Part shown: piece after piece, positions 13,601-63,077 of the stretch
How the letters are laid out: every line of letters begins with the position of its first letter
Position numbering within the stretch: position 1 is the stretch's first letter
NCBI GenBank assembly: GCA_965240325.2
Contig: OZ251247.1
Coordinates: forward strand, 496,001 to 560,000
Reading direction: 5' to 3'
From: Rebecca billardiae RCC1528
Taxonomy: Eukaryota > Protista > Haptophyta
Length of the DNA stretch: 64,000 nt
The notes under the pieces: generated by a model
Databases searched by the model: none
Told to the model about the DNA's origin: nothing
The model's input: only the letters and a program-made list of their open reading frames with translations
Translations under genes and position numbers: made by a program

Positions 13601-13904
13601 GTCGTCGCTGACGCCGTCGCGCGAGCTTGCGGTCCTCTCGCTTGGCGCCGCCGCGAGCGCTGGCACGCCCGCGCTGCAGCCGTGAGGACGGTTGGCCGCG
13701 GTGTCCTGCCACTGGAGAGGCAATCCGGTCAGCTATGACCACTGTCAAACCGCTTAGCGGCAAGGGAGGTCGTCGTAGCGGTACCGCCCTTGGTAGCGGT
13801 GTGCAGCGGGACCGCAGTCGCCGTCAGTCGTCACAACTCTCGATACTAGGCGTGCGTACGTCACACGACGAGTTGTTAAACGAGTCCCCGGGAGTCAACG
13901 CCGC

Positions 13905-20302: not shown

Positions 20303-20355
20303 TCGCGACTGATGCGAGGAGTGCTGCAAGCTGCGGTAGGTTTGCAGACGCCAAT

Positions 20356-21480
20356 CAAGGGCGGTAAGGGCTGTCAACTCCCAGTGGCGGCAGCGCCAGA
20401 GGTTGGTCGCCGCTTCGTCGCTGCGCGGCCTCGCTCCAGCGACTAACTCTCGTGGGCGCCCGCCCTGGGGGGCGAGTGGGGCGCGCACGGCGCGAGCTCC
20501 TGTGGCCGTGTACGCGCGCGCGGAGGCGGCGCGCGTGGCTGGGCAGGTGCTAAGGAGTGTATGTCGCCCTCCCACGCCGCGCGCCTTGCTCGCCGCCGCT
20601 TTCGCCGCGCCTCAGGCCAGCGCGCACGCGTGCGCCGCCTCCAGAGCCAGCCTCGGGCAATCGGCAGCCGCCCGCGCATGTGTGGTGCGCGGTCTGGTCG
20701 GCGCGAGTCGGTCGGGGCCATCGGGCGAGGCTCGCATACTATAGACGCGCGCCATGCCGCCTCGCGCCGCCGCGCGTGGGTTGTCATGGGTCGACACGCA
20801 AGCATCTTAGGTCTGACACGAACTGCAGCACGAATGCGAAAATGCTCATGTTTGGACGCTCATGGAGACGCTGGAGAGCACAATAGACGCGCGCAGGCGA
20901 TGAAGAGCGGGGCAACGCACTCATAGGACGCCGTACAAGCGCCCAATGCGGCCGCCTATCACGCGCATGTGCGCTCACTGTCACGTATTCGAGCTCATTT
21001 CTGCTTGTGCATTCATCGATCAGCTTCCTTCCACAGCTTCACGGGATGGGACCGGGCCCATGCGCGGCGGCGCGAGGCGGCATGGCGCGCGTCTATAGTA
21101 TGCGAGCCTCGCCCGATGGCCCCGACCGACTCGCGCCGACCAGACCGCGCACCACACATGCGCGGGCGGCTGCCGATTGCCCGAGGCTGGCTCTGGAGGC
21201 GGCGCACGCGTGCGCGCTGGCCTGAGGCGCGGCGAAAGCGGCGGCGAGCAAGGCGCGCGGCGTGGGAGGGCGACATACACTCCTTAGCACCTGCCCAGCC
21301 ACGCGCGCCGCCTCCGCGCGCGCGTACACGGCCACAGGAGCTCGCGCCGTGCGCGCCCCACTCGCCCCGCAGGGCGGGCGCCCACGAGAGTTAGTCGCTG
21401 GAGCGAGGCCGCGCAGCGACGAAGCGGCGACCAACCTCTGGCGCTGCCGCCACTGGGAGTTGACAGCCTTCCCGCCCTTG
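20356..21480. mobile_element. Foldback / long-TIR non-autonomous transposon (arms about 425 bp, spacer about 276 bp, TSD CGCCAAT)
   Basis: 20356-20780 is the near-perfect reverse complement of 21057-21480. Ends are CAAGGG...CCCTTG. cgccaat at 20349-20355 and 21481-21487. Confidence 0.9.
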
Positions 21481-21594
21481 CGCCAATCATCGCCCACTAT
21501 CGAGTGGCTCCGGCGACTGAGGCTATTCATGCTGAGCATATCCGCCGGACTCCTGGCCAACCGCCTTCGACTTCCGAGCGCCAAGGCCATATCG

Positions 21595-23067
21595 ATGACG
21601 ACGATGCAAGACGCGGCGACGGCGGCGCCGCGGCTGGCTGACCTGCCCGCCGAGGTCATCGAGCGCATTCTCCACGCACTTGACTCGCCTCGACACCTCG
21701 CCGCCGCCAACGCCGCCTCACGCCTCTTCCGTGGCGCGCCGGGCGGCCGCTCGCCGGTCGAGCACGCGCTGCGCAAGCGCGCGCGCGCGCGCGGGCACGA
21801 CCGCGCGCTGCCGCCGACGCTGCCCTCCGGCGTGCGCACGTGGGCATATGAGCTGTTTCTGCGCGAGCGTGTGCTCGAGCTCGCATGCGTCCACGCATCC
21901 CCGGTCGCGTGCGGTGACAACTTCAGCGCGTTTGTGGACGCGGAGGGCGGGCTGCACACGTGCGGCGAAGAGAAGGCGCGGGACGAGAACACCGGGCGGC
22001 CGACGGGCGAGTATCGAGCGCGCGCTGCAGTGGGTCATGCCGGTGTACCGGTGGTGTCCCGGACGTCGCGCGTCGCTTCGCTCAGCGCAGTGCGCGTGCG
22101 TTCTGTGGCGGCGGGCTGGACGCACCTGCTCGCGCTGAGCGATGCCGGCGCCGTGTACGGCTGCGGCTACAACAAGTACGGCCAGCTGGGGCTAGGGGAC
22201 ACGGAGGGGCGGCGGTCGTTCGTTCCGCTGGAGGCAATGCGGCGTGAGTCCGTCGTGGGCATCGCGGCCGGCATCCACCACAGCGTCGCGCTCACCGCCG
22301 CTGGGTGCGCGTACAGCTGGGGCGACAACGAGTGCGGCCAGCTCGGCCATGGCGACACGAAGGAGCGGTGGGAGCCGACCCGCATCGAGGCACTGGACGG
22401 CGTGCGCGTGGGCGGGATGGCCGCGGGGGGTGGGCACACGCTGCTTCTGACCACGCGCGGCGCCGTCTACTCGTGCGGCAGCGGATGGGACGGCCGTCTC
22501 GGCCACGGCGACGAGCAGCAGCAGCACACGCCGAGGCGCATCGAGGCGCTCGCTGGCGTGCGCGCCGTGCACGTGAGCGCGGGCGGCGCGCACAGCCTGG
22601 TGGTGGACGCGTCGGGCTGCGTGCATGGCGTCGGGGCTGCATCCTGCGGCTGTCTGGGCACCGTTGGCGACACGAGTGTCGCCCATAGGCAGCCCACGCG
22701 CATAGAGGCGCTCGCGGGTGTGAGCGCTGTCCGCGCGTGCGCTGGCACAGCCAGCAGCGCGGTGCTGGGCGCAGACGGCAGCGTGCACACGTTTGGGGAC
22801 AACCGGCACGGCCAGCTGGGGCACGAGGGCTCTGGCGAGATGCAGCTGCCCACGCGTGTGCACGCGCTCGCGCACGCGTGCGTCACGGTCTGTTCGCTCG
22901 GCGTTGCCCACGCGCTGTACGTCACCGCTGACGGCAGCGTGCACTCGTGCGGTCAGCAGTCGGCAGCGCTCGGCCACGGGCACGGCGTCTGCATCAGCAT
23001 GGCCGCCGAGCCCGAGGAGGGATCGCTGCGGACGCCCACGCGCATCGAGCAGCTGCCGCGTTTGTGA
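21595..23067 (+). CDS. F-box-like + 7x RCC1-repeat protein (copy 5, about 490 aa)
   Basis: MTTMQDAATAAPRLADLPAEVIERILHAL..., then seven RCC1 blades. The upstream part of the tracked ORF lies inside the transposon arm. Confidence 0.9.
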   Translation: MTTMQDAATAAPRLADLPAEVIERILHALDSPRHLAAANAASRLFRGAPGGRSPVEHALRKRARARGHDRALPPTLPSGVRTWAYELFLRERVLELACVHASPVACGDNFSAFVDAEGGLHTCGEEKARDENTGRPTGEYRARAAVGHAGVPVVSRTSRVASLSAVRVRSVAAGWTHLLALSDAGAVYGCGYNKYGQLGLGDTEGRRSFVPLEAMRRESVVGIAAGIHHSVALTAAGCAYSWGDNECGQLGHGDTKERWEPTRIEALDGVRVGGMAAGGGHTLLLTTRGAVYSCGSGWDGRLGHGDEQQQHTPRRIEALAGVRAVHVSAGGAHSLVVDASGCVHGVGAASCGCLGTVGDTSVAHRQPTRIEALAGVSAVRACAGTASSAVLGADGSVHTFGDNRHGQLGHEGSGEMQLPTRVHALAHACVTVCSLGVAHALYVTADGSVHSCGQQSAALGHGHGVCISMAAEPEEGSLRTPTRIEQLPRL

Positions 23068-31363: not shown

Positions 31364-32818
31364 ATGGCGGGCACGGACCAGGCGCCCGCGCGACCTCGCG
31401 CGCTCGACGACCTGCCTGCAGAGGTGCTCGACCGCATCATCACGCCCCTGCCGCGGCGTGACATCGCCAGTTTGAACGCCACCGCGCGCCTCTTCCACGC
31501 CGCGCCGCCCGGCGGGTCCTCGCCGGTCGAGCACGCGCTGCGCGAGCGCGCGCGCGCGCGGGGGCACGATCGCGCGCTGCCGCCGACTCTGCCCGCGCAC
31601 GCGTCGACCTGGGCGGCGGAGCTGTTCGCGCGCGAGCGCGTGCTCGAGCTCGCGTGCACGCACGCATCTCCCGTGGCGGCCGGTGACCGCTTCAGCGCGT
31701 TTGTGGACGCGGAGGGCGGGCTGCACACGTGCGGCGAGGAGGAGGAGGAGGACGAGGACTGGGGGGTGCCGACGGGCGAGTATCGAGTGCCCAGTGTGAT
31801 CAGCCACCCAGACGCCCAGGGGGTGCTCGTGCCGACGCGCGTCGCCTCGCTCTCCGCGGTGCGCGTGGTCGCGGTGGCGGCAGGCAGCTTCCACCTGCTC
31901 GCGCTGAGCGAGGCCGGCGCCGTGTACGGCTGCGGCCGCAACAGCTTCTGCCAGCTTGGGCTTGCGTACAAGGACGAGCTGCGTTCGTTCGCTCTCGTCG
32001 TGGCTTTGCGGCATGCGCCCATTGTGGGCATTGCTGCCGGCGGATTCCACAGCCTCGCGCTCACCGTCGCTGGTGCCGTGTACAGCTGGGGCTTCAACGT
32101 CCACGGCCAGCTCGGCCACGGTGACAAGAAGGACCGGCGGGAGCCGACGCGCATCGAGGCGCTGGACGGCGTGCGCATCGGCGGAGTGGCCGCTGGGTAT
32201 TTGCACACGCTGCTCGTGACCACGCGTGGTGCCGTCTACTCGTGCGGCTATGGCTACGACGGCCAGCTCGGCCACGGCGCTGAGCATGAGCAGCACACGA
32301 CGAGGCGCATCGAGGCGCTCGCGGGCGTGCGCGCCGTGCACGTGAGCACGAGCGATGGTCACAACCTGGTGGTGGACGCGGCGGGCTGCGTGCACTCGTT
32401 CGGGTATGGGCGCTCTGGGCAGCTCGGGCACGGCAATGATATCACCCAGTGGGTGCCCATGCCCATTGCCGCGCTTGCAAGCGTGCGCGCCGTGCGCGCG
32501 TGCGCTGGCTCCTCCAGCAGTGCGGTGGTGTGCGCGGACGGCAGCGTGCACACGTTCGGGAACAACGAGTACGGCCAGCTGGGGTACGAGGGCGCCGGTG
32601 GGTTGCAGCTGCCCACGCGTGTGCACGCGCTCGCGCATGCGCGCGTCACGCGCTGCTCTCTCGCTTCTGACCACGCGCTGTACGTCACCGCTGACGGCAG
32701 CGTGCACTCGTGCGGTCAGCACTCCGCAGCGCTCGGCCACGGCGTCAGCATGGCCGCCGAGCCCGAGGCGGGGTCGGTGCGGACGCCCACGCGCATCGAG
32801 CAGCTGCCGCGTTTGTGA
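31364..32818 (+). CDS. F-box-like + 7x RCC1-repeat protein (copy 6, 484 aa)
   Basis: LDDLPAEVLDRIITPLPRRDIASLNATARLF, then seven RCC1 blades. Confidence 0.9.
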   Translation: MAGTDQAPARPRALDDLPAEVLDRIITPLPRRDIASLNATARLFHAAPPGGSSPVEHALRERARARGHDRALPPTLPAHASTWAAELFARERVLELACTHASPVAAGDRFSAFVDAEGGLHTCGEEEEEDEDWGVPTGEYRVPSVISHPDAQGVLVPTRVASLSAVRVVAVAAGSFHLLALSEAGAVYGCGRNSFCQLGLAYKDELRSFALVVALRHAPIVGIAAGGFHSLALTVAGAVYSWGFNVHGQLGHGDKKDRREPTRIEALDGVRIGGVAAGYLHTLLVTTRGAVYSCGYGYDGQLGHGAEHEQHTTRRIEALAGVRAVHVSTSDGHNLVVDAAGCVHSFGYGRSGQLGHGNDITQWVPMPIAALASVRAVRACAGSSSSAVVCADGSVHTFGNNEYGQLGYEGAGGLQLPTRVHALAHARVTRCSLASDHALYVTADGSVHSCGQHSAALGHGVSMAAEPEAGSVRTPTRIEQLPRL

Positions 32819-33199
32819 CACGCGGGTCGTCAATGGTATTATTATGACAATGAGCCCTGTGCGTTGCGGATCGGGCTGCGGCGCTGAGTGCGTGTCAACT
32901 CACTCACCGTGAAGCTGAATAGCGGCTGCCTGCGGCCCTCGGCCCGTCCGCGGCCCGGCCTGCAGTCGCCAGTCGCCAGTCGCCACTAGCACTTGCTGGC
33001 GGCCTTCGAACGTGCCAGTGCGGCTTTCAGCTTGGCCGCTTGGGCCAAGACAGACGACGGTTGGCGCCGGGGCAAGGGACCCTCCCTTGGCCGGGGAGTG
33101 GTCAACGGTCATCACACCGGACTTTCCGGACTCACCAACGCCGGCCGGGCCGCACTGTGCCGCGCAACGACGCTTCGCCCGCGCGAACAGCCCCGAGCT

Positions 33200-34648
33200 A
33201 TGGCGCGCACGGATCAGGCGCCCTCACGCCCCCGAGCGCTCGACGACTTGCCTGCAGAGGTGCTCGACCGCATCATCGCACCCCTGCCGCCGCGTGATCT
33301 CGCCAGCCTGAACGCCACCGCGCGCCTCTTCCACGCCGCGCCGCCTGGCGGGTGCTCGCCGGTCGAGCGCGCGCTGCGCGAGCGAGCGCGCGCGCGCGGG
33401 CACGATCGCGCGCTGCCACCGACGCTCCCCACGCGCGAGTCGACGTGGACGGCGGAGCTGTTCGCGCGCGAGCGCGTGCTCGAGCTCGCGAGCGCGCACG
33501 CATCTCCCGTGGCGGCCGGCGACGGCTTCAGCGCGTTTGTGGACGCGGAGGGCGGGCTGCACACGTGCGGCGAGGAGGAGGTGTGGGACGAGCACGGGGA
33601 GCTGACGGGCGAGTACCGTCCGCACATTGCGACCAGCCGCCAAGGCGTCGAAGCGGTGCTCGTGCCGATGCGGGCCATCTCGCTCAGCGCAGTGCGCGTG
33701 CGCTCCGTGGCCGCTAGCTACCACCACCTGCTTGCGCTGAGCGATGCCGGCACAGTGTACGGCTGCGGCTACAACGACAACGGCCAGCTGGGGCTGGGGG
33801 ACAAGGACGAGCGGCGTTCGTTCGCTCTGGTTGTCGCCATGCGAGAGGAGCCCGCCGTGTGCATCGCTGCTGCCGGGTTCCACAGCCTCGCGCTCACCGC
33901 CGCGGGCTGCGCGTGCAGCTGGGGCTGCAACGACCACGGCCAGCTCGGCCACGGCGACACGGAGCAGCGGTTGAAGCCGACGCGCATCGAGGCGCTGGAT
34001 GGCGTGCGCGTGGGCGCGCTCTGCGCGGGGCCGCTGCACACGCTGCTGCTCTCGTCAGATGGTGCCGTCTTCTCATGCGGCCATGGCTTGAACGGCCAGC
34101 TCGGCCACGGCGACGAGCAGGATCAGCACGCGCCGAGGCGCATCGAGGCGCTCGTGGGCGTGCGCGCCGTGCACGTGAGAGCTGGCGGTGAGCACAGCCT
34201 GGTGGTCGACGCGGATGGTGGCGTGCACTCGTGTGGCTCTGGCAGCTATGGGGAGCTTGGGCATGGCGAAGCGGGCCATCATTCCGCCCCCACGCGCATC
34301 GAGGCCCTTGCAGGCATGCGCGCTGCATGCGCCAGCGCCTGCCTCGACTGCAGCGCGGTGCTGGGCGCGGACGGCAGCGTGCACACGTTCGGGCTCAACG
34401 TGTATGGTCCGCTGGGGCACCCGGGCTCTGGCAAGCTGCAGCTGCCCATGCGTGTGCACGCGCTCGCGCACGCGCGCGTCACGCGCTGCTCGCTGTCCAG
34501 CGCCCACGCGCTGTACGTGACAGAGGATGGATGTGTGTACTCGTGCGGCCAGCACTCGGCAGCGCTCGGCCATGGCGTGAGCATGGCCGCCCGTCATGCG
34601 GGGTCGGTGCGGACGCCCACGCGCATCGAGCAGCTGCCGCGTTTGTGA
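33200..34648 (+). CDS. F-box-like + 7x RCC1-repeat protein (copy 7, about 482 aa)
   Basis: MARTDQAPSRPRALDDLPAEVLDRII..., then seven blades. Start inferred from paralogues. Confidence 0.9.
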   Translation: MARTDQAPSRPRALDDLPAEVLDRIIAPLPPRDLASLNATARLFHAAPPGGCSPVERALRERARARGHDRALPPTLPTRESTWTAELFARERVLELASAHASPVAAGDGFSAFVDAEGGLHTCGEEEVWDEHGELTGEYRPHIATSRQGVEAVLVPMRAISLSAVRVRSVAASYHHLLALSDAGTVYGCGYNDNGQLGLGDKDERRSFALVVAMREEPAVCIAAAGFHSLALTAAGCACSWGCNDHGQLGHGDTEQRLKPTRIEALDGVRVGALCAGPLHTLLLSSDGAVFSCGHGLNGQLGHGDEQDQHAPRRIEALVGVRAVHVRAGGEHSLVVDADGGVHSCGSGSYGELGHGEAGHHSAPTRIEALAGMRAACASACLDCSAVLGADGSVHTFGLNVYGPLGHPGSGKLQLPMRVHALAHARVTRCSLSSAHALYVTEDGCVYSCGQHSAALGHGVSMAARHAGSVRTPTRIEQLPRL

Positions 34649-34952
34649 CACACGGGTCGGCATTATGAGCCCTGCGCGTTGGATGCTGCGGCGCTGTGCG
34701 AGAAGCTGAATAGCTGCCTGCGGCCCTCGGCCCGTCCACGGCCCGGCCTGCAGTCGCCAGTCGCCAGTCGCCACTAGCACTTGGCGGCGTTCGAACGTGC
34801 CAGTGCGGCCTGGCCGCTTGGGCCAAGACAGACGACGGTTGGCGCCGGGGAGTGGTCAATGGCGCATCACACCGACATCCGGACTCACCAACGCCGGCCG
34901 GGCCGCACTGTGCCGCGCAACGACGCTTCGCCCGCGCGAACAGCCCCGAGCT

Positions 34953-36416
34953 ATGGCGGGCACGGACCAGGCGCCCCCACGCCCCCGAGCGCTCGACGAC
35001 CTGCCTGCAGAAGTGCTCGACCGCATCATCGCACACCTGCCGCCACACGATCTCGCCAGCCTGAACGCCACCGCGCGCCTCTTCCATGACGCGCCGCCCG
35101 GCGAGCGCTCGCCGGTCGAGCGCGCGCTGCGCGAGCGAGCGCGCGCGCGCGGCCACGATCGCGCGCTGCCGCCGACGCTGCCCGCGCACGTGTCGACATG
35201 GACGGCGGAGCTGCTTGCGCGCGAGCGCGTGCTCGAGCTCGCGTGCGCGCACGCATCTCCCGTGGCGGCTGGCTATAGCATCAGCGCGTTTGTGGACGCG
35301 GAGGGCGGGCTGCACACGTGCGGCGAGGAGGAGGTGGGGGCCCGGTACGGGGAGCCGACGGGCGAGTACCGTCCGCATCTGGCGAGCAGCCACCAAGGCG
35401 TCGAAGGGGCGCTCGTGCCGATGCGGGCCATCTCGCTCAGCGCAGTGCGCGTGCGCTCCGTGGCCGCTAGCTACCACCACCTGCTTGCGCTGAGCGATGC
35501 CGGCGCCGTGTACGGCTGCGGCGACAACACGTTCGGCCAGCTGGGGCTGGGGGACAAGGACGAGCGGCGTTCGTTCGCTCTCGTTGACGCGTTGCGAGAG
35601 GAGCCCGCCGTGTGCATCGCTGCTGGCGGGGGCCACAGCCTGGCGCTCACCGCCGCTGGCTGTGTGTACAGCTGGGGCTGCAACGGGCTCGGCCAGCTTG
35701 GCCACGGCGACAGGAAGGAGCGGTGGGAGCCGACGCGCATCGAGGCGCTGGATGGCGTGTGGGTGGGCGGCGTGGCCGCGGGACATGAGCACACGCTGCT
35801 GCTCTCGACCAGTGGGGCCGTGTACTCGTGCGGCCATGGCCGCAGGGGCCGTCTCGGCCACGGCGACGAGCAGCATCAGCACACGCCGAGGCGCATCGAG
35901 GCGCTCGCGGGCGTGCGCGCCGTGCACGTGAGCGCGGGCCATGGCCACTCGTTCGGATCGGGCGGCCATGCCGAGCTTGGGCATGGTGGACGGTGCTACC
36001 GTGACGCCCCCACGCGCATCGAGGCCCTTGCAGGCGCGCGTGCCGTGCGCGCCAGCGCTGGCTTTGACAGCAGCGCGGTGCTGGGCGCGGACGGCAGCGT
36101 GCACACGTTCGGGCTCAACGTGTACGGTCCGCTGGGGCATCCGGGCTCTGGCAAGCTGCAGCTGCCCATGCGTGTGCACGCGCTCGCGCACGCGCGTGTA
36201 ACGCGCTGTTCGCTCGGCGTTGCCCACGCGCTGTACGTCACCGCTGACGGCGCTGTGTACTCGTGCGGCCAGCAGTCGGCAGCACTCGGCCAGGGCGTAA
36301 GCATGGCCGCCGCCTGGCCCGGGGCTGCGGAGGGAGGTGCCAGGACACTGCGGACGCCCACGCGCATCGAGCAGGCACCGCGTCTGCGTCTGCACGGGGG
36401 GCTCGGCTCTGCGTGA
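34953..36416 (+). CDS. F-box-like + RCC1-repeat protein (copy 8, about 487 aa) with an in-frame deletion in blade 5
   Basis: As copy 7, but HVSAGHGHSFGSGG lacks the SLVVDAxGxVH segment found in the other copies. Confidence 0.85.
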   Translation: MAGTDQAPPRPRALDDLPAEVLDRIIAHLPPHDLASLNATARLFHDAPPGERSPVERALRERARARGHDRALPPTLPAHVSTWTAELLARERVLELACAHASPVAAGYSISAFVDAEGGLHTCGEEEVGARYGEPTGEYRPHLASSHQGVEGALVPMRAISLSAVRVRSVAASYHHLLALSDAGAVYGCGDNTFGQLGLGDKDERRSFALVDALREEPAVCIAAGGGHSLALTAAGCVYSWGCNGLGQLGHGDRKERWEPTRIEALDGVWVGGVAAGHEHTLLLSTSGAVYSCGHGRRGRLGHGDEQHQHTPRRIEALAGVRAVHVSAGHGHSFGSGGHAELGHGGRCYRDAPTRIEALAGARAVRASAGFDSSAVLGADGSVHTFGLNVYGPLGHPGSGKLQLPMRVHALAHARVTRCSLGVAHALYVTADGAVYSCGQQSAALGQGVSMAAAWPGAAEGGARTLRTPTRIEQAPRLRLHGGLGSA

Positions 36417-36707
36417 GCTCTGTGCGTTGGCTGCTAGGTCATCGTGGCACGCTGAGTGGCGCAGTGCGCACAGAACTACACTTATGTCTTATTGCTATGA
36501 TGCGTTATTACTTATTGCGTGCAGACCTGGAGTCCCGGAGGCCGGAGTCCGGGCCCAAACGGTGAGTCTGAACCGGCGGCCAACCGTCAAACACAATTCT
36601 GGTCGGTTCGGTCCAGACGAGCCGCGCGGGCGGGCGGAACTGAAACATCAGTACCACTTTTCAAGTTTTCAGCGCCGCCGCGCGGCCCGCCGCCGGCGCC
36701 GACCGCG

Positions 36708-38237
36708 ATGGTACCAACGACGCGGCACGAGGGCGCGGGGTGCTCGGCGACGCCAGCGCTGCGCCTTGCGGACCTGCCGGACGAGGTCCTCGAACGCGTC
36801 CTGCTCGCGCTCGAGTGGGCGCGCGACCTCGCCGTGGCCAACGCCACCTCGCGCCTCTTCCGCGGCGCGCCGCCCGGCGGCCGCTCGGCGGTCGAGCACG
36901 CGCTGCGCGCGCGCGTGCGCGCGCGCGGGCACGAGCACGCGCTGCCCACCGAGCTGCCCGCGCAGGCGTGCACGTGGTCGTCCGAGCTCATCGCGCGCGA
37001 GCGCGTGCTCGAGCTCGCGCGGGCGCACGCGCTGCCCGCGGCCGCCGGCGGCGAGTGTGAGTTTAGCGCGTTCAGCGCGTTTGTGGACGCGGCGGGCGCG
37101 CTGCACACGTGCGGCGAGGAGGACCGGGACGAGGCGGACGAGGAGCGCACTTGCGCGGCGATGGGTCACCCGGACGTGCGCGAGGTGATCGTGCCCACGC
37201 GCGTGCCCTCGCTCTCCGCGGTGCGCGTGCTCGCGGTCGCGGCCGGCCGAGAGCACCTGCTCGCGCTTGGCGACGGCGGCGCCGTGTACAGCTGCGGCAG
37301 CAACCGCGACGGGCAGCTCGGGCTCGGCGAGGCGTGCCGGTGCCGCACGTTCCAGCGCGTCGCCGAGGGCGCGGGCCAGTGGTTTGTCGGCGTCGCCGCC
37401 GCCGGCCGGCACAGCCTCGCGCTCAGCGCCGCTGGGTGTGCGTACAGCTGGGGCTGGGGCCATTACGGCCAGCTCGGACACGGCGGCTCTGAGGCGCGGT
37501 GGGAGCCGACGCGGATCGAGGCGCTGGAGGGCGTGCGCGTGGGCGGCGTCGCTGCGGGGTTCTTCCACACGCTGCTGCTCTCCGCCGCGGGCGACGTCTA
37601 CTCGTGCGGCTGCGGCGCGCACGGGCGCCTCGGCCACGGCGACAGGCAGGGCCAGCTCACGCCGACGCGCATCGAGGCGCTGGACGGCGTGCGCGCCGTG
37701 CACGTGAGCGCGGGCCTGCGGCACAGCCTGCTCGTCGACGCGGACGGCCGCGTGCACTCGTTCGGCTCGGGCGCGGCGGGCTGCCTCGGCCACGGCGACG
37801 AGGCCACGCAGCTTCTGCCCAAGCCCATCGCCGCGCTGGCGGGCGTGCGCGCCGTGCGCGCGTGCGCGGGCATGGGCAGCAGCGCGGTGCTGGGCGCGGA
37901 CGGCAGCGTGCACACGTTCGGCGACAACGAGCAAGGGCAGCTCGGGCTCGGCTCGGAGCGCGAGTGCGCGCGGCTGCCCGCGCGCGTCGACGCCCTCGCG
38001 CACCAGCCCGTGCTCGGCTGCTCGCTCGGCTGGGAGCACGCGCTGCTCGTAACTGCCGACGGTGCCGTGCACTCGTGCGGCACCCGCTCGGCCGCGCTCG
38101 GCCACGGCGCGTCTGCGAGCTCAGCAGCCGCCGCCGCCGTCGGTACGGGCGGTGGCGGCCGCGCGGAGCTGCGCGCGCCGGCGCGGATCGCGCGGCTGCC
38201 GCCCGTGGACGCTGCGGCCGCGCGCTGCGCCGTGTAG
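36708..38237 (+). CDS. F-box-like + 7x RCC1-repeat protein (copy 9, about 509 aa; most GC-pure codons)
   Basis: LADLPDEVLERVLLALEWARDLAVANATSRLF, then seven blades. AT-rich promoter-like patch at 36588-36671. Confidence 0.92.
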   Translation: MVPTTRHEGAGCSATPALRLADLPDEVLERVLLALEWARDLAVANATSRLFRGAPPGGRSAVEHALRARVRARGHEHALPTELPAQACTWSSELIARERVLELARAHALPAAAGGECEFSAFSAFVDAAGALHTCGEEDRDEADEERTCAAMGHPDVREVIVPTRVPSLSAVRVLAVAAGREHLLALGDGGAVYSCGSNRDGQLGLGEACRCRTFQRVAEGAGQWFVGVAAAGRHSLALSAAGCAYSWGWGHYGQLGHGGSEARWEPTRIEALEGVRVGGVAAGFFHTLLLSAAGDVYSCGCGAHGRLGHGDRQGQLTPTRIEALDGVRAVHVSAGLRHSLLVDADGRVHSFGSGAAGCLGHGDEATQLLPKPIAALAGVRAVRACAGMGSSAVLGADGSVHTFGDNEQGQLGLGSERECARLPARVDALAHQPVLGCSLGWEHALLVTADGAVHSCGTRSAALGHGASASSAAAAAVGTGGGGRAELRAPARIARLPPVDAAAARCAV

Positions 38238-38620: not shown

Positions 38621-40144
38621 ATGAGCGACACACCGATCAAGCGCCACGCGAGCGCGGCGCGCCCGGTGAGAGCGACGTCACAGCTCACCTGCCTGCCCGC
38701 TGAGGTCATCGAGCGCATGTTGATGGCGCTTGATCATCCGCGTGACCTCGCCGCCGCGAACGCCGTCTCGCGCCTCTTCCGCGGCGCACCCGGCGGTCGC
38801 TCGCCGGTCGAGCACGCGCTGCGCGAGCGCGCTCGTGCTCGCGGGCACGCGCGCGCGCTGCCGCCGACGCTGCCCGTGGGCGCCTGCACGTGGACGGAGG
38901 AGCTTTTCGACCGCGAGCGCGTGCTCGAGCTTGCGCGCGCGCACGCGAACGTCGTGGCTGCCGGCGGGGTCGACAAGGCGGGCTGCTTCAGCGCGTTTGT
39001 GGACGCGGAGGGCGGGCTGCACACGTGCGGCGAGGAGGAGGAGGTGGACGACGACGGGAACATGACGGGCGCGTACGTCCCGCCCATAGTCATCGGCCAC
39101 TCGGATCTGACGGCAATACGTGTGCCCACAAGCGTGGCCTCGCTCAGCGCAGTGCGCGTGCGTTCTGTGGCCGCTGGCAAGCACCACCTGCTTGCGCTGA
39201 GCGACGCCGGCACCGTGTACGGCTGCGGCGAGAACAGGTACGGCCAACTCGGGCTTGGCGACGACGACGAGAGGCGTGCATTCGCGCACATTCAGGCGCT
39301 CGAGAGCGAGGCCATTGTCGGCATCGCCGCTGGCTTTTACCACAGCCTCGCGCTCGCCGCCGCTGGCTGTGCGTACAGCTGGGGCGGCAACTACTGGGGC
39401 CAGCTCGGCCACGGCGACAAGAAGGAGCGGTGGGAGCCGACGCGGGTCGAGGCGCTGGACGGCGTGCGCGCTTGCGGGCTCTGCGCGGGGTGGCAGCACA
39501 CGCTGCTGCTCTCGTCGAGCGGTGCCGTCTACTCGTGTGGCAGTGACCTAGCCGGCAGGCTCGGCCACGGCGACCAGGAGGCTCAGCACACGCCGAGGCG
39601 CATCGAGGCGCTCGCGGGCGTGCGCGCTGTGCACGTGAGCGCGGGCAGTTACCACAGCCTGGTGGTGGACAGCGAGGGGGCGGTGTACTCGTGTGGGTAT
39701 GGCTTGTCTGGCAGGCTCGGGCACGGAGACACGCTCTTCGAGCTTGCGCCGAGGCGCGTCGACGCCCTGGCTGGCGTGCTAGCCGTGCGCGCGTGCGCTC
39801 GCGCAGACTCCAGCGGGGTGGTTGGCGCGGACGGCAGCGTGCACACCTTCGGGGACAACTGGCACGGCCAGCTTGGGCGCCCGGGGGTTGACGAGCTGCA
39901 GCTGCCCACGCGTGTGCACGCGCTTGCGAGTGCGCGCGTAACGCGCTGCTCGCTCGGCGTTGCCCACGGCTTGTACGTGACAGCCGACGGGGGTGTGTAC
40001 TCGTGCGGCCTGCAGTCGGCAGCGCTCGGCCACGGCGTGAGCATGGCCGCTGAGGCGGGGTTGCTGCGGACGCCCATGCGCATCGAGCAGCTGCCGCACG
40101 TGCAGCCGTTCGGCATCGGCGAGAGGGCGGCGCTGGCTTCGTGA
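38621..40144 (+). CDS. F-box-like + 7x RCC1-repeat protein (copy 10, 507 aa)
   Basis: LTCLPAEVIERMLMALDHPRDLAAANAVSRLF, then seven blades. Confidence 0.9.
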   Translation: MSDTPIKRHASAARPVRATSQLTCLPAEVIERMLMALDHPRDLAAANAVSRLFRGAPGGRSPVEHALRERARARGHARALPPTLPVGACTWTEELFDRERVLELARAHANVVAAGGVDKAGCFSAFVDAEGGLHTCGEEEEVDDDGNMTGAYVPPIVIGHSDLTAIRVPTSVASLSAVRVRSVAAGKHHLLALSDAGTVYGCGENRYGQLGLGDDDERRAFAHIQALESEAIVGIAAGFYHSLALAAAGCAYSWGGNYWGQLGHGDKKERWEPTRVEALDGVRACGLCAGWQHTLLLSSSGAVYSCGSDLAGRLGHGDQEAQHTPRRIEALAGVRAVHVSAGSYHSLVVDSEGAVYSCGYGLSGRLGHGDTLFELAPRRVDALAGVLAVRACARADSSGVVGADGSVHTFGDNWHGQLGRPGVDELQLPTRVHALASARVTRCSLGVAHGLYVTADGGVYSCGLQSAALGHGVSMAAEAGLLRTPMRIEQLPHVQPFGIGERAALAS

Positions 40145-44383: not shown

Positions 44384-45976
44384 ATGGGTCAACTTCTTAG
44401 CGCCGAGGCGTGCTCGGCGCCGGCGCCGCGGCTGACCGACCTGCCCGCCGAGGTGATCGAGCGCATCCTGCTCGCGGTCGGCCGGCCGCATGACCTCGCC
44501 GCGGCCAACGCTACCTCGCGCCTATTCCGCGGCGCGCCCGGCGAGCGCTCGCCGGTGGAGCACGCGCTGCGCGAGCGCGCTCGTGCTCGCGGGCACGCTT
44601 CCGCGTTGCCGACCGAGCTGCCGGCGGGCGTGCGCACGTGGTCCGAGGAGTTGTTCGCCCAGGAACGCGTGTACGGGCTTGCCCGGGGTCACGCCATGCC
44701 CGTCGCTGCCGGTGGGGAGCCTTATCGCCGCGTGCTGAGCGCGTTTGTGGACGCGGAGGGCGGGCTGCACACGTGCGGCGAGGAGCTCGTGTGCGGCGAG
44801 CACGGGCGGGCGGACGTTCGTCCTGCCCGCGCCCTTGGCGTCACGGGTGCGGACATGGCACGCGAGCCCACGCGCGTCGCCTCGCTCAGCGCAGTGCGCG
44901 TGCGCTCCGTGGCCGCTGGGCGGGACCACCTGCTCGCGCTGAGCGCCGCCGGCACCGTGTACGGCTGCGGCTACAACGGGTGCGGCCAGCTGGGGCTGGG
45001 TGACGACGACAAGAGGCGGTCGTTTGCGGAGGTAGTCGTGCCTTCAGGTGGGTTGGTCGTGGCTATCGCCGCGGCCGATTGCCTCAGCTTCGCGCTCACC
45101 GCCGCTGGCTGTGTGTACAGCTGGGGCCGCAACTACTACGGCCAGCTCGGCCACGGCGACACGAAGGACCGGTGGGAGCCGACGCGCATCGAGGCGCTCG
45201 ACGGCGTGCGCGTCGGCGGCCTGGGCGCAGGGGGTGACCACACGCTGCTCCTATCTGCACACGGCGCCGTCTACTCTTTTGGCGTCGGCTCCTGGGGCCG
45301 TCTAGGCCACGGCAACCAACAGGATCAGCGCACGCCGAGGCGCATCGAGGCGCTCGCGGGCGTGCGCGCCGTGCACGTGAGCGCGGGCCGTGCGCACAGC
45401 CTGGTGGTGGACAGCGGGGGGGTGGTGTACTCGTTTGGGTGTGGTGAAGATGGCTGCCTGGGCCGCGGCGACATTGTTTCGCGGCGTCTGCCCAAGCGCA
45501 TCGCGGCACTGGCGGGCGTGCGCGCGGTGCGCGCATGCGCTGGGCCTGACTGCAGCGCGGTGCTGGGTGCGGACGGCAGCGTGCACACGTTCGGGGCCAG
45601 CTTCGAGGGCAAGCTGGGCCACGTATCTGATCCCGTCTATGGCAGTTGCCGGCAGCCTACGCGGTTACACTCCCTTGCGCATACGCGTGTGATCAGCTGC
45701 GCGCTCTACGCCACCCACGGCTTGTACGTGACAGCCGACGGGGCTGCGTACTCGTGCGGCCTGCAGTCGGCAGCGCTCGGCCAGGGCGTGAGCATGGCCG
45801 CCGCTGAGGCGGGGTCGCTGTGGACGCCGCCCATCCGCATCGAGCAGCTGCCGCGCGTGGGCGCACCGCCGGCCTCGGGTTGGGCATGGCTGGACGACGG
45901 CGGCGCTCACTGTCCTGCAGCGGAGCGGCATGCGCTGGCCGCGTCTGATGAGTGGGCACTGTACCGCTGTACGTAG
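44384..45976 (+). CDS. F-box-like + 7x RCC1-repeat protein (copy 11, about 530 aa), MGQLLS start and extended C-terminus
   Basis: aggATGGGT start context shared with copies 12 and 13. LTDLPAEVIERILLAV, then seven blades. Confidence 0.9.
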   Translation: MGQLLSAEACSAPAPRLTDLPAEVIERILLAVGRPHDLAAANATSRLFRGAPGERSPVEHALRERARARGHASALPTELPAGVRTWSEELFAQERVYGLARGHAMPVAAGGEPYRRVLSAFVDAEGGLHTCGEELVCGEHGRADVRPARALGVTGADMAREPTRVASLSAVRVRSVAAGRDHLLALSAAGTVYGCGYNGCGQLGLGDDDKRRSFAEVVVPSGGLVVAIAAADCLSFALTAAGCVYSWGRNYYGQLGHGDTKDRWEPTRIEALDGVRVGGLGAGGDHTLLLSAHGAVYSFGVGSWGRLGHGNQQDQRTPRRIEALAGVRAVHVSAGRAHSLVVDSGGVVYSFGCGEDGCLGRGDIVSRRLPKRIAALAGVRAVRACAGPDCSAVLGADGSVHTFGASFEGKLGHVSDPVYGSCRQPTRLHSLAHTRVISCALYATHGLYVTADGAAYSCGLQSAALGQGVSMAAAEAGSLWTPPIRIEQLPRVGAPPASGWAWLDDGGAHCPAAERHALAASDEWALYRCT

Positions 45977-52129: not shown

Positions 52130-52133
52130 CATG

Positions 52134-52392
<259 letters not shown>

Positions 52393-59361: not shown

Positions 59362-60840
59362 ATGGCTCAACGCGAGGGCTCCGTGGCGTGCTCGGTGGCG
59401 TCGGCGCCGCGGCTGGCCGAGCTGCCCGCCGAGGTGATCGAGCGCATCCTGCTCTTGGTTGGCCGCCCGCGTGACATCGCTGCTGCTAACGCTGCCTCGC
59501 GCCTCTTCCGTGGCGCGCCCGGCGGCCGCTCGCCGGTCGAGCACGCGCTGCGCGAGCGCGCTCGTGCTCGCGGGCACGCGCGCGCGCTGCCAACCGAGCT
59601 GCCGGCGGGCGTGCGCAGCTGGACGGAGGAGCTCTTGGCGCGCGAGAGCGTGCTCGTACTTGCGAGTGAGCACGCGTCTCCTGTGGCGGCTGGCGACTGC
59701 TTCAGCGCGTTTGTGGACGCGGAGGGCGGGCTGCACATGTGCGGCGAGGAGGAGGAGGTGGACGACGACGGGCACAAGACGGGCGCGTACGTCCCGCCCA
59801 TAGCGACCAGCCACTCGGATCTGACGGCAATGCGTGTGCCCACAAGCGTGGCCTCGCTCGCCGCGGTGCGCGTGCGCTCTGTGGCCGCTGGCACTGACCA
59901 CCTGCTCGCACTGACCGACGCCGGCACCGTGTACGGCTGCGGCTACAACGACTTCGGCCAGCTCGGGCTGGGTGACGACGACGAGAGGCGTGCATTCGCG
60001 CACGTTCAGGCGCTCGCGGGCGAGATCAGTGTGGCCATCACGGCTGGCTATCGCCACAGCCTCGCGCTCACCGCCGCTGGGTGTGCGTACAGCTGGGGCT
60101 GCAACGATGGCGGCCAGCTCGGCCACGGCGACACGAAGGAGCGGTGGGAGCCGACGCGCATCGAGGCGCTGGATGGCGTGCGCGTTGGAGGGGTGGGCGC
60201 AGGAGGCGATCGCACGCTGCTTCTCACCGCGCGAGGCGCCGTGTACTCTTTCGGCGGAGCCTCGGCCGGCATGCTTGGCCACGACGACGAGGAGGATCAG
60301 CTCACGCCGAGGCGCATCGAGGCGCTCGCGGGCGTGCGCGCCGTGCACGTGAGCGCTGGCTACGAGCACAGCCTGGTGGTAGACGCAGCGGGCGCTTCGT
60401 ACTCGTTTGGCGGGGGCAGTCATGGTCAGCTTGGACGGGACGAACGGCGCTGCCGTGTCCCCGCGCGCATCGAGGCCCTTGCATGCGTGCGCGCCGTCCG
60501 CGCGTGCGCTGGCTCCTACAGCAGCGCTGTGCTGGGCGCGGATGGCAGCGTGCACACGTTCGGGAACAACTGGCACGGCCAGCTGGGGCACCCGGGCTCT
60601 CGCAAGCTGCAGCTGCCCATGCGTGTGCACGCGCTCGCGCATGAGCGCGTGTTCTGCTACGCCGTGGGCCGCACCCACTCGCTGTTTGCGAGTGCGGACG
60701 GCGCAGCGTACTCGTGCGGCAAGCAGTCGGCCGCGCTCGGCCACGGCGTGAGCGAGGCTACTGCTGAGGCTGGGTCGCTGCGGTCGCCCACGCGCATCCA
60801 GCAGCTGCTGCGCGTGGGCGCACGGCCGGCCTCGGGCTGA
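59362..60840 (+). CDS. F-box-like + 7x RCC1-repeat protein (copy 12, about 492 aa)
   Basis: LAELPAEVIERILLLVGRPRDIAAANAASRLF, then seven blades. Confidence 0.9.
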   Translation: MAQREGSVACSVASAPRLAELPAEVIERILLLVGRPRDIAAANAASRLFRGAPGGRSPVEHALRERARARGHARALPTELPAGVRSWTEELLARESVLVLASEHASPVAAGDCFSAFVDAEGGLHMCGEEEEVDDDGHKTGAYVPPIATSHSDLTAMRVPTSVASLAAVRVRSVAAGTDHLLALTDAGTVYGCGYNDFGQLGLGDDDERRAFAHVQALAGEISVAITAGYRHSLALTAAGCAYSWGCNDGGQLGHGDTKERWEPTRIEALDGVRVGGVGAGGDRTLLLTARGAVYSFGGASAGMLGHDDEEDQLTPRRIEALAGVRAVHVSAGYEHSLVVDAAGASYSFGGGSHGQLGRDERRCRVPARIEALACVRAVRACAGSYSSAVLGADGSVHTFGNNWHGQLGHPGSRKLQLPMRVHALAHERVFCYAVGRTHSLFASADGAAYSCGKQSAALGHGVSEATAEAGSLRSPTRIQQLLRVGARPASG

Positions 60841-61607: not shown

Positions 61608-63077
61608 ATGGCGGCTCATCAACGCAAGACGAGTAGCGCCGTGGCGTGCGCGGCGGCGCCGGCGCCGCGGCTGGCCGAGCTGCCCGCCGAGGTGATCGAG
61701 CGCATCCTGCTCGCGGTTCGCAGGACGCGTGATATCGCCGCCGCCAACGCCACGGCGCGCCTCTTCCGCGGCGCACCCGGCGGTCGCTCGCCGGTCGAGC
61801 ACGCGCTGCGCGAGCGCGCTCGTGCTCGCGGGCACGCGCGTGCGCTGCCGACCGAGCTGCCGGCGGGCGTGCGCAGCTGGACGGAGGAGCTCTTGGCGCG
61901 CGAGAGCGTGCTCGTGCTTTCGAGTGAGCACGCGTCTCCCGTGGCGGCTGGCGACAGCTTCAGCGCGTTTGTGGACGCGGAGGGCGGGCTGCACACGTGC
62001 GGCGAGGAGGAGGAGGTGGACGACGACGGGCACAAGACGGGCGCGTACGTCCCGCCCATAGCGATCGGCCACTCGGATCTGACGGCAATACGTGTGCCCA
62101 CAAGCGTGGCCTCGCTCGCCGCGGTGCGCGTGCGCTCTGTGGCCGCTGGCGAGCACCACCTGCTTGCGCTGAGCGATGCCGGCGCCGTGTATGGCTGCGG
62201 CAAGAACGACCAAGGCCAACTCGGGCTGGGTGACGACGACGAGAGGCGTGCATTCGCGCACATTCAGGCGCTCGAGAGCGAGGCCATTGTCGGCATCGCC
62301 GCTGGCTTTTACCACAGTCTCGCGCTCGCCGCCGCTGGCTGTGCGTACAGCTGGGGCGGCAACTACTGGGGCCAGCTTGGCCACGGCGACAAGAAGGAGC
62401 GGTGGGAGCCGACGCGCATCGAGGCGCTGGACGGCGTGCGCGTGGGCGGAGTGGCCGCAGGTGAAGCCCACACGCTGCTTCTCACCACGCGAGGCGCCGT
62501 GTACTCGTGTGGTGACGGCATCTTAGGCGCTCTGGGCCACGACGACGAGGAGGATCAGCTCACGCCGAGGTGCATCGAGGCGCTCGCGGGCGTGTGCGCC
62601 GTGCACGTGAGCGCGGGCGCTGGTCACAGCCTGGTGGTGGACGCAGTGGGAAGCGTGCACTCCTTCGGCTGGGGGGGAGGAGGCCTCCCCGGCGATGGAG
62701 ACGAGGGCCCCCAGCGCGTGCCCAAACGTGTCGAGGCGCCGGCGGGCGTGCGCGTCGTGCGCGCGTGCGCCGGCCCCTTCTGCAGTGCGGTGCTGGGCGC
62801 AGACGGCAGCGTGCACACGTTTGGGCACAACGACTTCGGGCAGCTGGGGCACGGCATCGATGGCGATTTTAAGCTGCCGGAGCGCGTGCTCGCCCTTGCG
62901 CATGAGCGCGTGTTCTGCTACGCCGTGGGCCGCACCCACGCGCTGTACGTGACAGCGCATGGATGTGTGTACTCGTGCGGCCAGCACTCGGCAGCACTCG
63001 GCCACGGCGTCAGCATGGCCGCAGAGCCTGGGTCACTGCGGACGCCCACGCGCATCGAGCAGCTGCCGCGTTTGTGA
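61608..63077 (+). CDS. F-box-like + 7x RCC1-repeat protein (copy 13, about 489 aa), a mosaic of other copies
   Basis: LAELPAEVIERILLAVRRTRDIAAANATARLF, then seven blades. Confidence 0.9.
   Translation: MAAHQRKTSSAVACAAAPAPRLAELPAEVIERILLAVRRTRDIAAANATARLFRGAPGGRSPVEHALRERARARGHARALPTELPAGVRSWTEELLARESVLVLSSEHASPVAAGDSFSAFVDAEGGLHTCGEEEEVDDDGHKTGAYVPPIAIGHSDLTAIRVPTSVASLAAVRVRSVAAGEHHLLALSDAGAVYGCGKNDQGQLGLGDDDERRAFAHIQALESEAIVGIAAGFYHSLALAAAGCAYSWGGNYWGQLGHGDKKERWEPTRIEALDGVRVGGVAAGEAHTLLLTTRGAVYSCGDGILGALGHDDEEDQLTPRCIEALAGVCAVHVSAGAGHSLVVDAVGSVHSFGWGGGGLPGDGDEGPQRVPKRVEAPAGVRVVRACAGPFCSAVLGADGSVHTFGHNDFGQLGHGIDGDFKLPERVLALAHERVFCYAVGRTHALYVTAHGCVYSCGQHSAALGHGVSMAAEPGSLRTPTRIEQLPRL

What the first reader, a model, noticed from the sequence alone, without database searches (positions are those of the whole stretch)
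61608..63077. Blade-level cassette shuffling: copy 13 is a patchwork of copies 12, 10, 3 and 7
Seen: the N-terminal part through DDDGHKTGAYVPPIA, plus HDDEEDQLTPR and HERVFCYAVGRTH, matches copy 12. AFAHIQALESEAIVGIAAGFYH...GGNYWGQLGHGDKKERW (about 62235-62415) matches copy 10 (about 39265-39445). AGEAHTLLLTTRGAVY.CGDGILGALGHDD (about 62455-62547) matches copy 3 (about 16645-16735), 45 kb away on the opposite strand, including rare codons TTA, GAA and CGA. The GCVYSCGQHSAALGHG tail matches copy 7. Other pairs: copies 2 and 11 (GRNYYGQLGHGDTKDRW), 1 and 5 (GCVHGVG..S.GCLGT), 7, 8 and 12 (HPGS.KLQLPMRVH). Inference: segmental gene conversion builds new binding surfaces combinatorially.
Basis: seen in the sequence. 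Interest (0 to 1): 0.85.

Follow-up and report, generated by a model that had tools for sequence, protein, structure and literature searches.

The report
Mosaic paralogs in F-box/RCC1 array
One gene in a cluster of 13 related propeller-protein genes really is a patchwork of stretches shared with four sister copies, which is best explained by ordinary DNA exchange between paralogs reshuffling the variable surface loops of a probable ubiquitin-ligase adaptor family.

Summary
The window holds 13 intact paralogs, each an F-box-like N-terminus plus an RCC1 propeller (59-77% aa identity to copy 13). It looks eukaryotic, at about 70% GC.

Copy 13 (61608-63077) switches nearest relative along its length: c12, then c10, then c3, with a short c12 patch inside the c3 stretch. 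An orphan stretch follows, then c12, then c7.

The pattern is far beyond chance:
- PHI z = -21, against -2.7 to +2.8 in 12 no-recombination simulations.
- AU tests on each of five segments reject the other four segments' trees.
- Synonymous divergence collapses inside the tracts (c13-c3 dS 0.08 against about 0.6 elsewhere).

Convergence is therefore excluded. Tracts differ by 0-5%, which argues against assembly chimeras, but no public read spans a junction.

The whole family is mosaic; c1-c2 dS runs from 0.00 to 0.59. Tracts are 40-940 nt and always in register, so these are not discrete or movable cassettes. The direction of transfer is unresolved.

The tracts carry hypervariable loop codons that align to UVR8 interface positions, and copy 13 has a unique loop combination. 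I read this as evolutionary gene conversion, as in plant NLR clusters. There is no sign of a programmed system. Other windows of this genome hold further arrays of the family.

The parts
61608..63077 (+). Copy 13 CDS (489 aa): F-box-like N-terminus, linker and RCC1-like propeller
   Evidence: ORF and ATG. Pfam WD40_RLD 1.5e-72 and RCC1 1.8e-61. PDB HERC2 RLD 1.6e-65 and UVR8 1.5e-61.
61756..62150 (+). c12-like tract of copy 13 (partner 59498-59892)
   Evidence: 13 mismatches in 395 nt. c12-c13 dS is 0.02-0.05 here against 0.3-0.9 downstream.
61957..62442 (+). c10-like tract of copy 13 (partner 38985-39470). The core, 62232-62417, is where c10 beats c12.
   Evidence: 24 mismatches in 486 nt, 2 in the core. 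Segment-B tree groups (c10,c13) at 96%. dN 0 and Sd 4 in segment B.
62419..62456 (+). Junction interval between the c10-like and c3-like tracts; it lies in a framework stretch conserved in most copies
   Evidence: The last c10 mismatches are at 62417/62418 and the c3 tract starts at 62457. Many copies are at least 0.9 identical here.
62457..62644 (+). c3-like tract of copy 13, carrying the blade-3 loops and the first blade-4 loop
   Evidence: 7 mismatches in 188 nt, next best partner 0.82. dS 0.079 against 0.57-0.66 elsewhere. Shared rare codons TTA, GAA, CGA. 3SEQ-like z 19.7-24.7.
16546..16733 (-). Partner tract in copy 3 (inverted orientation, about 45 kb away)
62535..62614 (+). Short c12-like patch nested in the c3-like tract (partner 60277-60356); diagnostic sites 62547-62560
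   Evidence: 2 mismatches in 80 nt against c12. The four c3 mismatches at 62547-62560 are c12-like.
62645..62860 (+). Orphan stretch (blades 4-5) with no close relative in the window
   Evidence: Best identity 0.6-0.8. c13 stands alone in the segment-D tree. Other arrays exist elsewhere in the genome.
62898..62939 (+). c12-like tract (partner 60637-60678)
   Evidence: 0 mismatches in 42 nt.
62935..62995 (+). c7-like tract (partner 34503-34563)
   Evidence: 2 mismatches in 61 nt. dS 0.057 against 0.4-0.8 elsewhere.
59362..60840 (+). Copy 12 CDS, tandem neighbour of copy 13. The homology unit is about 59390-61210 / 61650-63460.
   Evidence: The 3' non-coding flank is 82-93% identical, more alike than the 3' half of the CDS (53-85%).
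38621..40144 (+). Copy 10 CDS
16080..17645 (-). Copy 3 CDS
33200..34648 (+). Copy 7 CDS
11738..15524 (-). Copies 1 and 2 (13357-11738 and 15524-13905): 938 nt at 97.4% at the 5' end, diverged at the 3' end
   Evidence: dS is 0.00-0.02 from the N-terminus to B1 and 0.27-0.59 in B3-B6.
18785..23067 (+). Copies 4 (18785-20302) and 5 (21595-23067)
31364..38237 (+). Copies 6 (31364-32818), 8 (34953-36416) and 9 (36708-38237), with copy 7 between copies 6 and 8
44384..45976 (+). Copy 11 CDS

Best explanation
The window carries a cluster of 13 intact paralogs. Each encodes a probable SCF-type adaptor: an F-box-like helix, a conserved linker and an RCC1-like propeller. The scaffold is nearly invariant, and two to three loop positions per blade are hypervariable.

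Over evolutionary time the copies have exchanged stretches of about 40-900 nt by homologous, in-register recombination. Ectopic gene conversion is the most likely mechanism, because partners include inverted and distant copies and the tracts are short and nested. Unequal crossover between neighbours may add to it.

Copy 13 has taken part in at least five such exchanges, with the lineages of c12, c10, c3 and c7. Because the tracts carry loop codons, each exchange re-assorts loop sets, and every copy ends with a unique combination.

Shown: the mosaic, its statistical significance, its presence at synonymous sites and its in-register nature. Inferred: conversion as the mechanism, the direction of each event, the SCF adaptor role and the ligand-binding role of the loops.
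For: Mosaic tracts at nucleotide level.

Statistical tests:
- PHI z = -21.2, p < 0.0005. Twelve simulations on the ML tree, with the same site-by-site rates and no recombination, gave z from -2.7 to +2.8.
- 3SEQ-like z reached 24.7, against a simulated maximum of 9.4.
- 30 GENECONV-like fragments lie above the per-pair permutation nulls.

Phylogeny: the segment trees place c13 with c12 (100), then c10 (96), then c3 (83). On every segment the AU test rejects the other four segments' trees at p < 0.01.

Synonymous sites: dS falls 5-10 fold inside the tracts for c13-c3, c13-c7, c13-c12 and c1-c2. Rare codons are shared.

Against assembly artefact: tracts differ at 0-5% of sites, with dN = 0 and 4 synonymous differences in the c10 tract. 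That is expected after an old exchange followed by purifying selection, not from an assembly error.

Tandem pair: the c12/c13 3' non-coding flank is more alike than the 3' half of their CDS.

Binding surface:
- At motif-defined loop positions pN/pS is 1.14, against 0.53 elsewhere.
- Those positions align to the UVR8 GWRHT and GW positions.
- The loop table shows that c13's combination is unique.

F-box: 10 of 13 N-termini hit Pfam F-box-like (best E 2.1e-5).
Against: - There is one haplotype only, so non-reciprocity and direction are untested.
- No public read or contig spans any junction, so an assembly or polishing chimera is argued against but not excluded.
- The segment boundaries for the trees were chosen after seeing c13's pattern.
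- The loop positions for pN/pS were picked after seeing the variability, and pN is near saturation.
- The F-box hits fall short of Pfam's gathering score where a bit score was seen (19.9 and 18.1 against 24.3). The N-terminal model was poor (pLDDT 57.7) and a profile search of the PDB found nothing.
- No expression data.
Confidence: 0.8

Rival explanations
1. Chimeric genes arose through unequal crossover and birth-and-death duplication alone. Each mosaic boundary is then a crossover junction fixed when a new copy was born, not a non-reciprocal conversion.
For: The copies are tandem and neighbours share long 5' blocks: c1/c2 938 nt, and likewise c6/c7/c8 and c12/c13. Single-breakpoint patterns such as c1/c2 fit a hybrid duplicate.
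Against: Copy 13 needs at least five switches within 1.4 kb, including a c12-like patch whose only sites distinguishing c12 from c3 lie at 62547-62560, nested in the c3 tract. The partners c3 and c2 lie in inverted orientation, where a crossover would invert the interval. The tracts of 42-188 nt are conversion-sized.
Confidence: 0.1
2. Assembly or polishing artefact: reads from paralogs were mis-assigned, so consensus patches were transplanted between copies.
For: The paralogs share long conserved framework stretches. No spanning read could be examined: the only run holding the organism gave fragments of 31-167 nt.
Against: The tracts are not identical. There are 7 differences in 188 nt with c3 and 24 in 486 nt with c10, and these include copy-13-specific changes at 62571 and 62595 shared with neither partner. 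The flanks are only 70-80% identical, too divergent for read mis-mapping. The same mosaic style is seen in all 13 copies.
Confidence: 0.05
3. No exchange took place. Identical loops arose by convergent selection for the same ligand-binding residues on a conserved scaffold.
For: The loop positions look selected (pN at or above pS).
Against: Synonymous sites and rare codons are shared inside the tracts and diverged outside them. The no-recombination simulation does not reproduce the signal.
Confidence: 0.02
4. A programmed or somatic diversification system: cassettes are copied into expressed genes during the organism's life, as in VLR, vlsE or pilE/pilS.
For: The end product, re-assorted loop sets, resembles what such systems make.
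Against: All 13 copies are full-length open genes. There are no silent partial donors and no single expression site. The tracts have accumulated 1-5% divergence, so they are old germline events. No read data show within-culture variants.
Confidence: 0.03

Closest known systems
Plant NLR (NBS-LRR) resistance-gene clusters with sequence exchange between paralogs, e.g. coffee SH3-CNL (PMC3113787) and Arabidopsis RPP8 (PMC6771003)
   Same: Tandem clusters of intact paralogs. Gene conversion is detected between paralogs, and positive selection falls on solvent-exposed repeat positions over a conserved scaffold. The result is mosaic genes with new combinations of recognition residues.
   Different: The scaffold here is an RCC1 seven-blade propeller joined to an F-box-like motif, not an LRR joined to an NB-ARC switch. 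The host looks like a high-GC unicellular eukaryote. No immune role is known.
Expanded, positively selected F-box adaptor families of nematodes and plants (C. elegans wild isolates, PMC8120010)
   Same: Large lineage-specific families of putative SCF substrate adaptors, in which the substrate-recognition domain is the fast-evolving part.
   Different: Those families use FTH, FBA, kelch or LRR recognition domains. Here the domain is an RCC1 propeller. The F-box match here falls short of Pfam's gathering score where a bit score was seen.
Mammalian FBXO24 (F-box plus RCC1 domain; PMC10932545)
   Same: The same two-domain architecture. FBXO24 assembles with SKP1, CUL1 and RBX1, and its RCC1 domain binds the substrate MIWI.
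   Different: FBXO24 is a single conserved gene, not a hypervariable array. No specific sequence relationship to it was tested here.
UVR8 and the HERC2 RCC1-like domains (PDB 4D9S, 4NC4, 3KCI)
   Same: The best solved-structure matches (E 1e-61 to 1e-65). The hypervariable AGxxH and GxNxxG positions align to the UVR8 GWRHT and GW positions, which from published UVR8 structures (my own knowledge) lie on the dimer-interface face.
   Different: UVR8 and HERC2 are conserved single genes. UVR8's tryptophans are not conserved here.
Programmed cassette systems (lamprey VLR, Borrelia vlsE, Neisseria pilE/pilS, chicken Ig pseudo-V)
   Same: Segmental, conversion-like copying that re-assorts variable segments on a constant scaffold.
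   Different: Those systems have silent partial donors, one expression site and somatic or clonal-time-scale events. None of these features is seen here.

Membership tests
RCC1-like domain (RLD) propeller proteins | Significant match to the RCC1 repeat and RLD profiles across about seven blades | tested here: met
   PF25390 at 245 bits (cut-off 150) and PF00415 at 205 bits. HERC2 RLD and UVR8 at E 1e-61 to 1e-65.
F-box proteins (SCF substrate adaptors) | An F-box motif recognised by profile | tested here: inconclusive
   10 of 13 N-termini hit PF12937 at E of 0.1 or less, best 2.1e-5. The two hits whose bit scores were seen, c5 at 19.9 and c6 at 18.1 bits, lie below the 24.3 cut-off. Copy 13 itself has no hit. 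The PDB profile search was empty and the AF2 model of the N-terminus was poor. The relatives P0015 and P0039 carry a precomputed PF12937.
F-box proteins (SCF substrate adaptors) | Binds Skp1 and assembles with a cullin | not testable with these tools
   Needs pull-down or yeast two-hybrid.
Ectopic (interlocus) gene conversion among paralogs | Clustered shared polymorphisms or mosaic tracts beyond chance | tested here: met
   PHI z -21, GENECONV-like fragments and 3SEQ-like z up to 24.7, with a no-recombination simulation as control.
Ectopic (interlocus) gene conversion among paralogs | Phylogenetic incongruence between segments | tested here: met
   Segment trees. AU tests reject all cross-segment trees at p < 0.01.
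Ectopic (interlocus) gene conversion among paralogs | Synonymous divergence drops inside the tracts (identity by descent, not convergence) | tested here: met
Ectopic (interlocus) gene conversion among paralogs | Non-reciprocal transfer (donor unchanged) and a known direction | not testable with these tools
   One haplotype only, with no outgroup arrays. The segment-C tree gives only weak hints.
Programmed cassette diversification (VLR, vlsE, pilS type) | Silent partial donor cassettes feeding one expression site | tested here: not met
   All 13 copies are complete open reading frames with their own start and stop.
Programmed cassette diversification (VLR, vlsE, pilS type) | New variants arise within a clone or individual | not testable with these tools
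   Only short low-depth contigs were available.
Diversifying recognition repertoire (NLR-like evolutionary mode) | Excess non-synonymous change confined to predicted surface positions of the repeats | tested here: inconclusive
   pN/pS is 1.14 at 25 motif-defined loop codons (pN > pS in 54 of 78 pairs), against 0.53 elsewhere (0 of 78). The positions were chosen after seeing the alignment and are near saturation, and no codon-model test was run.

The most novel reading that the evidence does not exclude
The F-box-like/RCC1 arrays of this genome (this one plus several others noted by the scan) form a germline-encoded, rapidly diversifying recognition repertoire of ubiquitin-ligase adaptors. Its purpose might be to tag viral, parasitic or non-self proteins for degradation. 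Interlocus gene conversion would be the generator that re-assorts blade loop sets. That would make it a protist counterpart of plant NLR clusters, built on a propeller scaffold not previously known to serve this role.
Probability: 0.3. Interest if true: 0.8.

Novelty: new variant of a known kind. Interest (0 to 1): 0.55.

Why it matters
Sequence exchange between clustered paralogs is a textbook way to diversify recognition proteins, as in NLRs and the MHC. Seeing it on an F-box-like/RCC1 propeller family with periodic hypervariable loops is new in the literature I could search. It points to an undescribed ubiquitin-based recognition repertoire in a unicellular eukaryote.

The finding gives concrete handles: defined tracts, junctions and loop sets. 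With these one could test whether the loop combinations set substrate specificity, and how fast the arrays re-assort.

Tried and rejected
- Reads. The first run search, on the gene itself, listed nothing. Two further tries found the machine busy. The search that worked found one sample. Its contigs cover the stretch only as 31-167-nt fragments, and none bridges a junction. The assembly question therefore stays open.
- N-terminal F-box. The AlphaFold model from the 13-row alignment reached only pLDDT 57.7, so no fold search was run. A profile search of PDB sequences found nothing.
- Literature. Searches for F-box/RCC1 hypervariable families or RCC1 gene conversion found nothing relevant.
- Out-of-register blade shuffling, that is true movable cassettes. 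Tested and rejected: 0 of 78 blade units have their nearest neighbour at another blade position.
- Convergence. Rejected by the dS profile.
- Rate heterogeneity as the cause of the test signals. Rejected by simulation. The simulation also shows that 3SEQ-like z values below about 10 are unreliable, so only the top rows count.
- Direction of transfer. Considered from the segment trees and dS profiles and left unresolved.
- Source organism. Not identified. The best named relative is an Emiliania huxleyi protein at 36% identity, and the closest metagenome protein, P0001, is 54% identical.

Full report
**What is there.**
- A tblastn of the copy-13 protein finds 13 collinear, full-length matches in the window at 59-77% amino-acid identity.
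- All 13 lie in open reading frames with their own ATG and stop. The coordinates are c1 13357-11738(-), c2 15524-13905(-), c3 17645-16080(-), c4 18785-20302, c5 21595-23067, c6 31364-32818, c7 33200-34648, c8 34953-36416, c9 36708-38237, c10 38621-40144, c11 44384-45976, c12 59362-60840 and c13 61608-63077.
- Copy 13 matches the Pfam RCC1-like domain and RCC1 repeats strongly. Its best solved relatives are the HERC2 RLD and UVR8.
- The N-terminus carries an LPxEVxERIL motif. It hits Pfam F-box-like in 10 of 13 copies, best E 2.1e-5. The two hits whose bit scores I saw (c5 and c6, 19.9 and 18.1 bits) lie below the 24.3 gathering score.
- The window is about 70% GC and holds a protein kinase split across frames. 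The scan's notes speak of 36 pieces and hundreds of windows for this genome, so it is a eukaryote.
- Metagenome proteins at 39-54% identity share the whole architecture.

**The observation.** Along copy 13 the nearest relative changes as follows:
- c12 for 61756-62150 (13 mismatches in 395).
- c10 for 61957-62442 (24 in 486). The core 62232-62417 has 2 mismatches, while c12 falls to 77-83% there.
- c3, on the opposite strand about 45 kb away, for 62457-62644 against 16733-16546 (7 in 188; the next best copy is 82%).
- A c12-like patch nested inside the c3 tract, 62535-62614. The four sites that differ from c3, at 62547-62560, are c12-like.
- An orphan stretch, 62645-62860, with no close relative in the window.
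- c12 again for 62898-62939 (0 in 42).
- c7 for 62935-62995 (2 in 61).

TTA is used 3 times in 631 Leu codons of the family, and two of those are c3 and c13 at the same column. GAA and CGA are shared too, together with several synonymous third positions.

**More than chance?**
- The PHI statistic lies 21 standard deviations below its permutation mean.
- A GENECONV-like scan gives 30 fragments above the per-pair permutation nulls.
- A 3SEQ-like scan of all triplets gives z up to 24.7, and triplets with copy 13 as child are the top hits.
- As a control I simulated 12 alignments on the ML tree, with the same per-site rates in the same positions and no recombination. PHI z ranged from -2.7 to +2.8 and the best 3SEQ-like z was 9.4. 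Positional rate heterogeneity therefore does not explain the signal.
- ML trees of five segments place c13 with c12 (100%), with c10 (96%), with c3 (83%), alone, and with c12 (83%). On every segment the AU test rejects the trees of all four other segments at p < 0.01. The segment limits were chosen from c13's pattern, which favours rejection, but the likelihood differences are large (17-340 log units).

**Descent or convergence?** Synonymous divergence follows the mosaic:
- c13-c3 dS is 0.079 in the c3 tract and 0.57-0.66 elsewhere.
- c13-c7 is 0.057 against 0.4-0.8.
- c13-c12 is 0.05 in the 5' tract against 0.3-0.9 downstream.
- c1-c2 has dS 0.00-0.02 from the N-terminus through blade 1 and 0.27-0.59 in blades 3-6.

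These profiles rule out convergent selection. They show the whole family is mosaic, as does the painting. The c12/c13 tandem unit adds a further clue: its non-coding 3' flank is 82-93% identical, more alike than the 3' half of the CDS at 53-85%. The coding 3' half has therefore been overwritten or driven apart.

- Tracts run from about 40 to about 940 nt and do not coincide with blade units of about 156 nt. Their ends fall in framework stretches that most copies share, where breakpoints cannot be resolved.
- Exchange is strictly in register. Each of the 78 blade units has its nearest neighbour at the same blade position. These are not movable cassettes.
- Direction is open. For the c10 tract, the c10-c13 dS is even across the linker, blade 1 and blade 2 (0.09-0.15). 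The local contrast with c12 may reflect a change in c12, which is itself mosaic (it shares YR with c3 and GD with c11).
- For the c3 tract, the segment tree puts (c3,c13) next to c12 at 76%. That hints weakly at c13-to-c3 transfer, no more.

**Assembly artefact?** I could not test this directly. The only public sample holding the organism gave fragments of 31-167 nt, and none bridges a junction. One 167-nt contig matches 63051-63217 exactly, so the organism or a near-identical strain is in that run. The indirect argument is fair:
- Tracts differ from their partners at 0-5% of sites.
- They include changes private to copy 13 (62571 and 62595).
- The c10 tract shows 4 synonymous and 0 non-synonymous differences, the mark of an old event under purifying selection.

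**How it probably works.**
- The scaffold is nearly invariant, while periodic positions carry 6-10 different residues among the 13 copies. These are the two residues in AG-xx-H, three in G-x-N-xx-G, and the residues after GHGD.
- At 25 codons defined by motif, pN/pS is 1.14 and pN > pS in 54 of 78 pairs. In the rest of the propeller it is 0.53 and 0 of 78. This is suggestive only, because the positions were picked after seeing the alignment.
- In the HMMER alignment these positions fall on UVR8's GWRHT and GW residues. From the published UVR8 structures (my own knowledge, not tested here) those residues line one face of the propeller.
- The loop table shows copy 13 with blade-2 loops equal to c10, blade-3 loops equal to c3, the blade-3 acidic loop equal to c12, blade-6 loops equal to c12 and to c6/c7, and private loops in blades 1, 4 and 5. 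No other copy has this set.
- The likely picture is a family of SCF-type adaptors whose propeller face binds varied targets. In-register interlocus gene conversion, perhaps with some unequal crossover, re-assorts the loop sets, and selection keeps the scaffold.
- FBXO24 shows that an F-box/RCC1 protein can work as an SCF adaptor (PMC10932545).

**Comparison and novelty.**
- The evolutionary mode matches plant NLR clusters, where conversion between paralogs and positive selection on solvent-exposed residues act together (PMC3113787, PMC6771003). It also matches fast-evolving F-box families (PMC8120010).
- The scaffold and the host are different, and I found no paper describing such a family.
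- Nothing supports a programmed system: all copies are complete genes and the tracts are old.
- The scan's first readers noted the same family on this window and on other pieces of the genome. Those notes are unchecked, but they make donors outside the window likely for the orphan stretch.

**Verdict.** Evolutionary exchange between paralogs is the best explanation (confidence 0.8). The cassette wording, the direction of transfer and the functional claim remain unproven. This is a new variant of a known kind, of moderate interest.

Noticed in passing
window 23415-25945 (decaying copies to about 26813): Tandem array of a 183-nt unit, 13.6 copies at 92% identity, between copies 5 and 6.
   Followed up: partly
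window 20356-20780 and 21057-21480: A 425-nt inverted repeat at 99% identity between copies 4 and 5.
   Followed up: no
window 27206-27749, 30940-31272, 23204-23416: A roughly 544-nt element whose 5' 333 nt recur at 30940-31272 (99.7%) and whose 3' 213 nt recur at 23204-23416 (99.5%). It may be the ends of a mobile element or the scars of a duplication.
   Followed up: no
window 46359-49287: A 1359-nt tandem duplication at 99.6% identity, with further 100% identical sub-blocks. The ORFs there have no Pfam hit.
   Followed up: no
window 4550-7860: A protein kinase domain split over two reading frames in a 76-79% GC stretch. This implies introns and a eukaryotic origin.
   Followed up: partly
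window 13358-13732 (-) and 15525-16079 (-): The ORFs of copies 1 and 2 continue upstream, in frame, through a shared Cys/His-rich stretch that might be a zinc-binding module. It has no Pfam hit.
   Followed up: partly
window 34953-36416 (copy 8): An 11-codon in-frame gap in blade 4 relative to all other copies. This propeller may be defective.
   Followed up: no
window 59390/61650 and 61210/63460: The homology between the c12 and c13 units begins only about 40 nt inside the CDS, so there is no shared upstream region. It continues about 380 nt past the stop codon.
   Followed up: partly
L001 153-1703; proteins P0001, P0002, P0005, P0008-P0010, P0017: Environmental relatives at 39-54% identity keep the full architecture: the LPxEV motif, the RSPVE..LRERA linker, the FSAFVDA motif and the RCC1 blades. 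The family therefore extends beyond this genome.
   Followed up: partly
window 49332-49491 and 52130-52389: (ATAC)n / (CATA)n microsatellites of 40 and 66 units.
   Followed up: no
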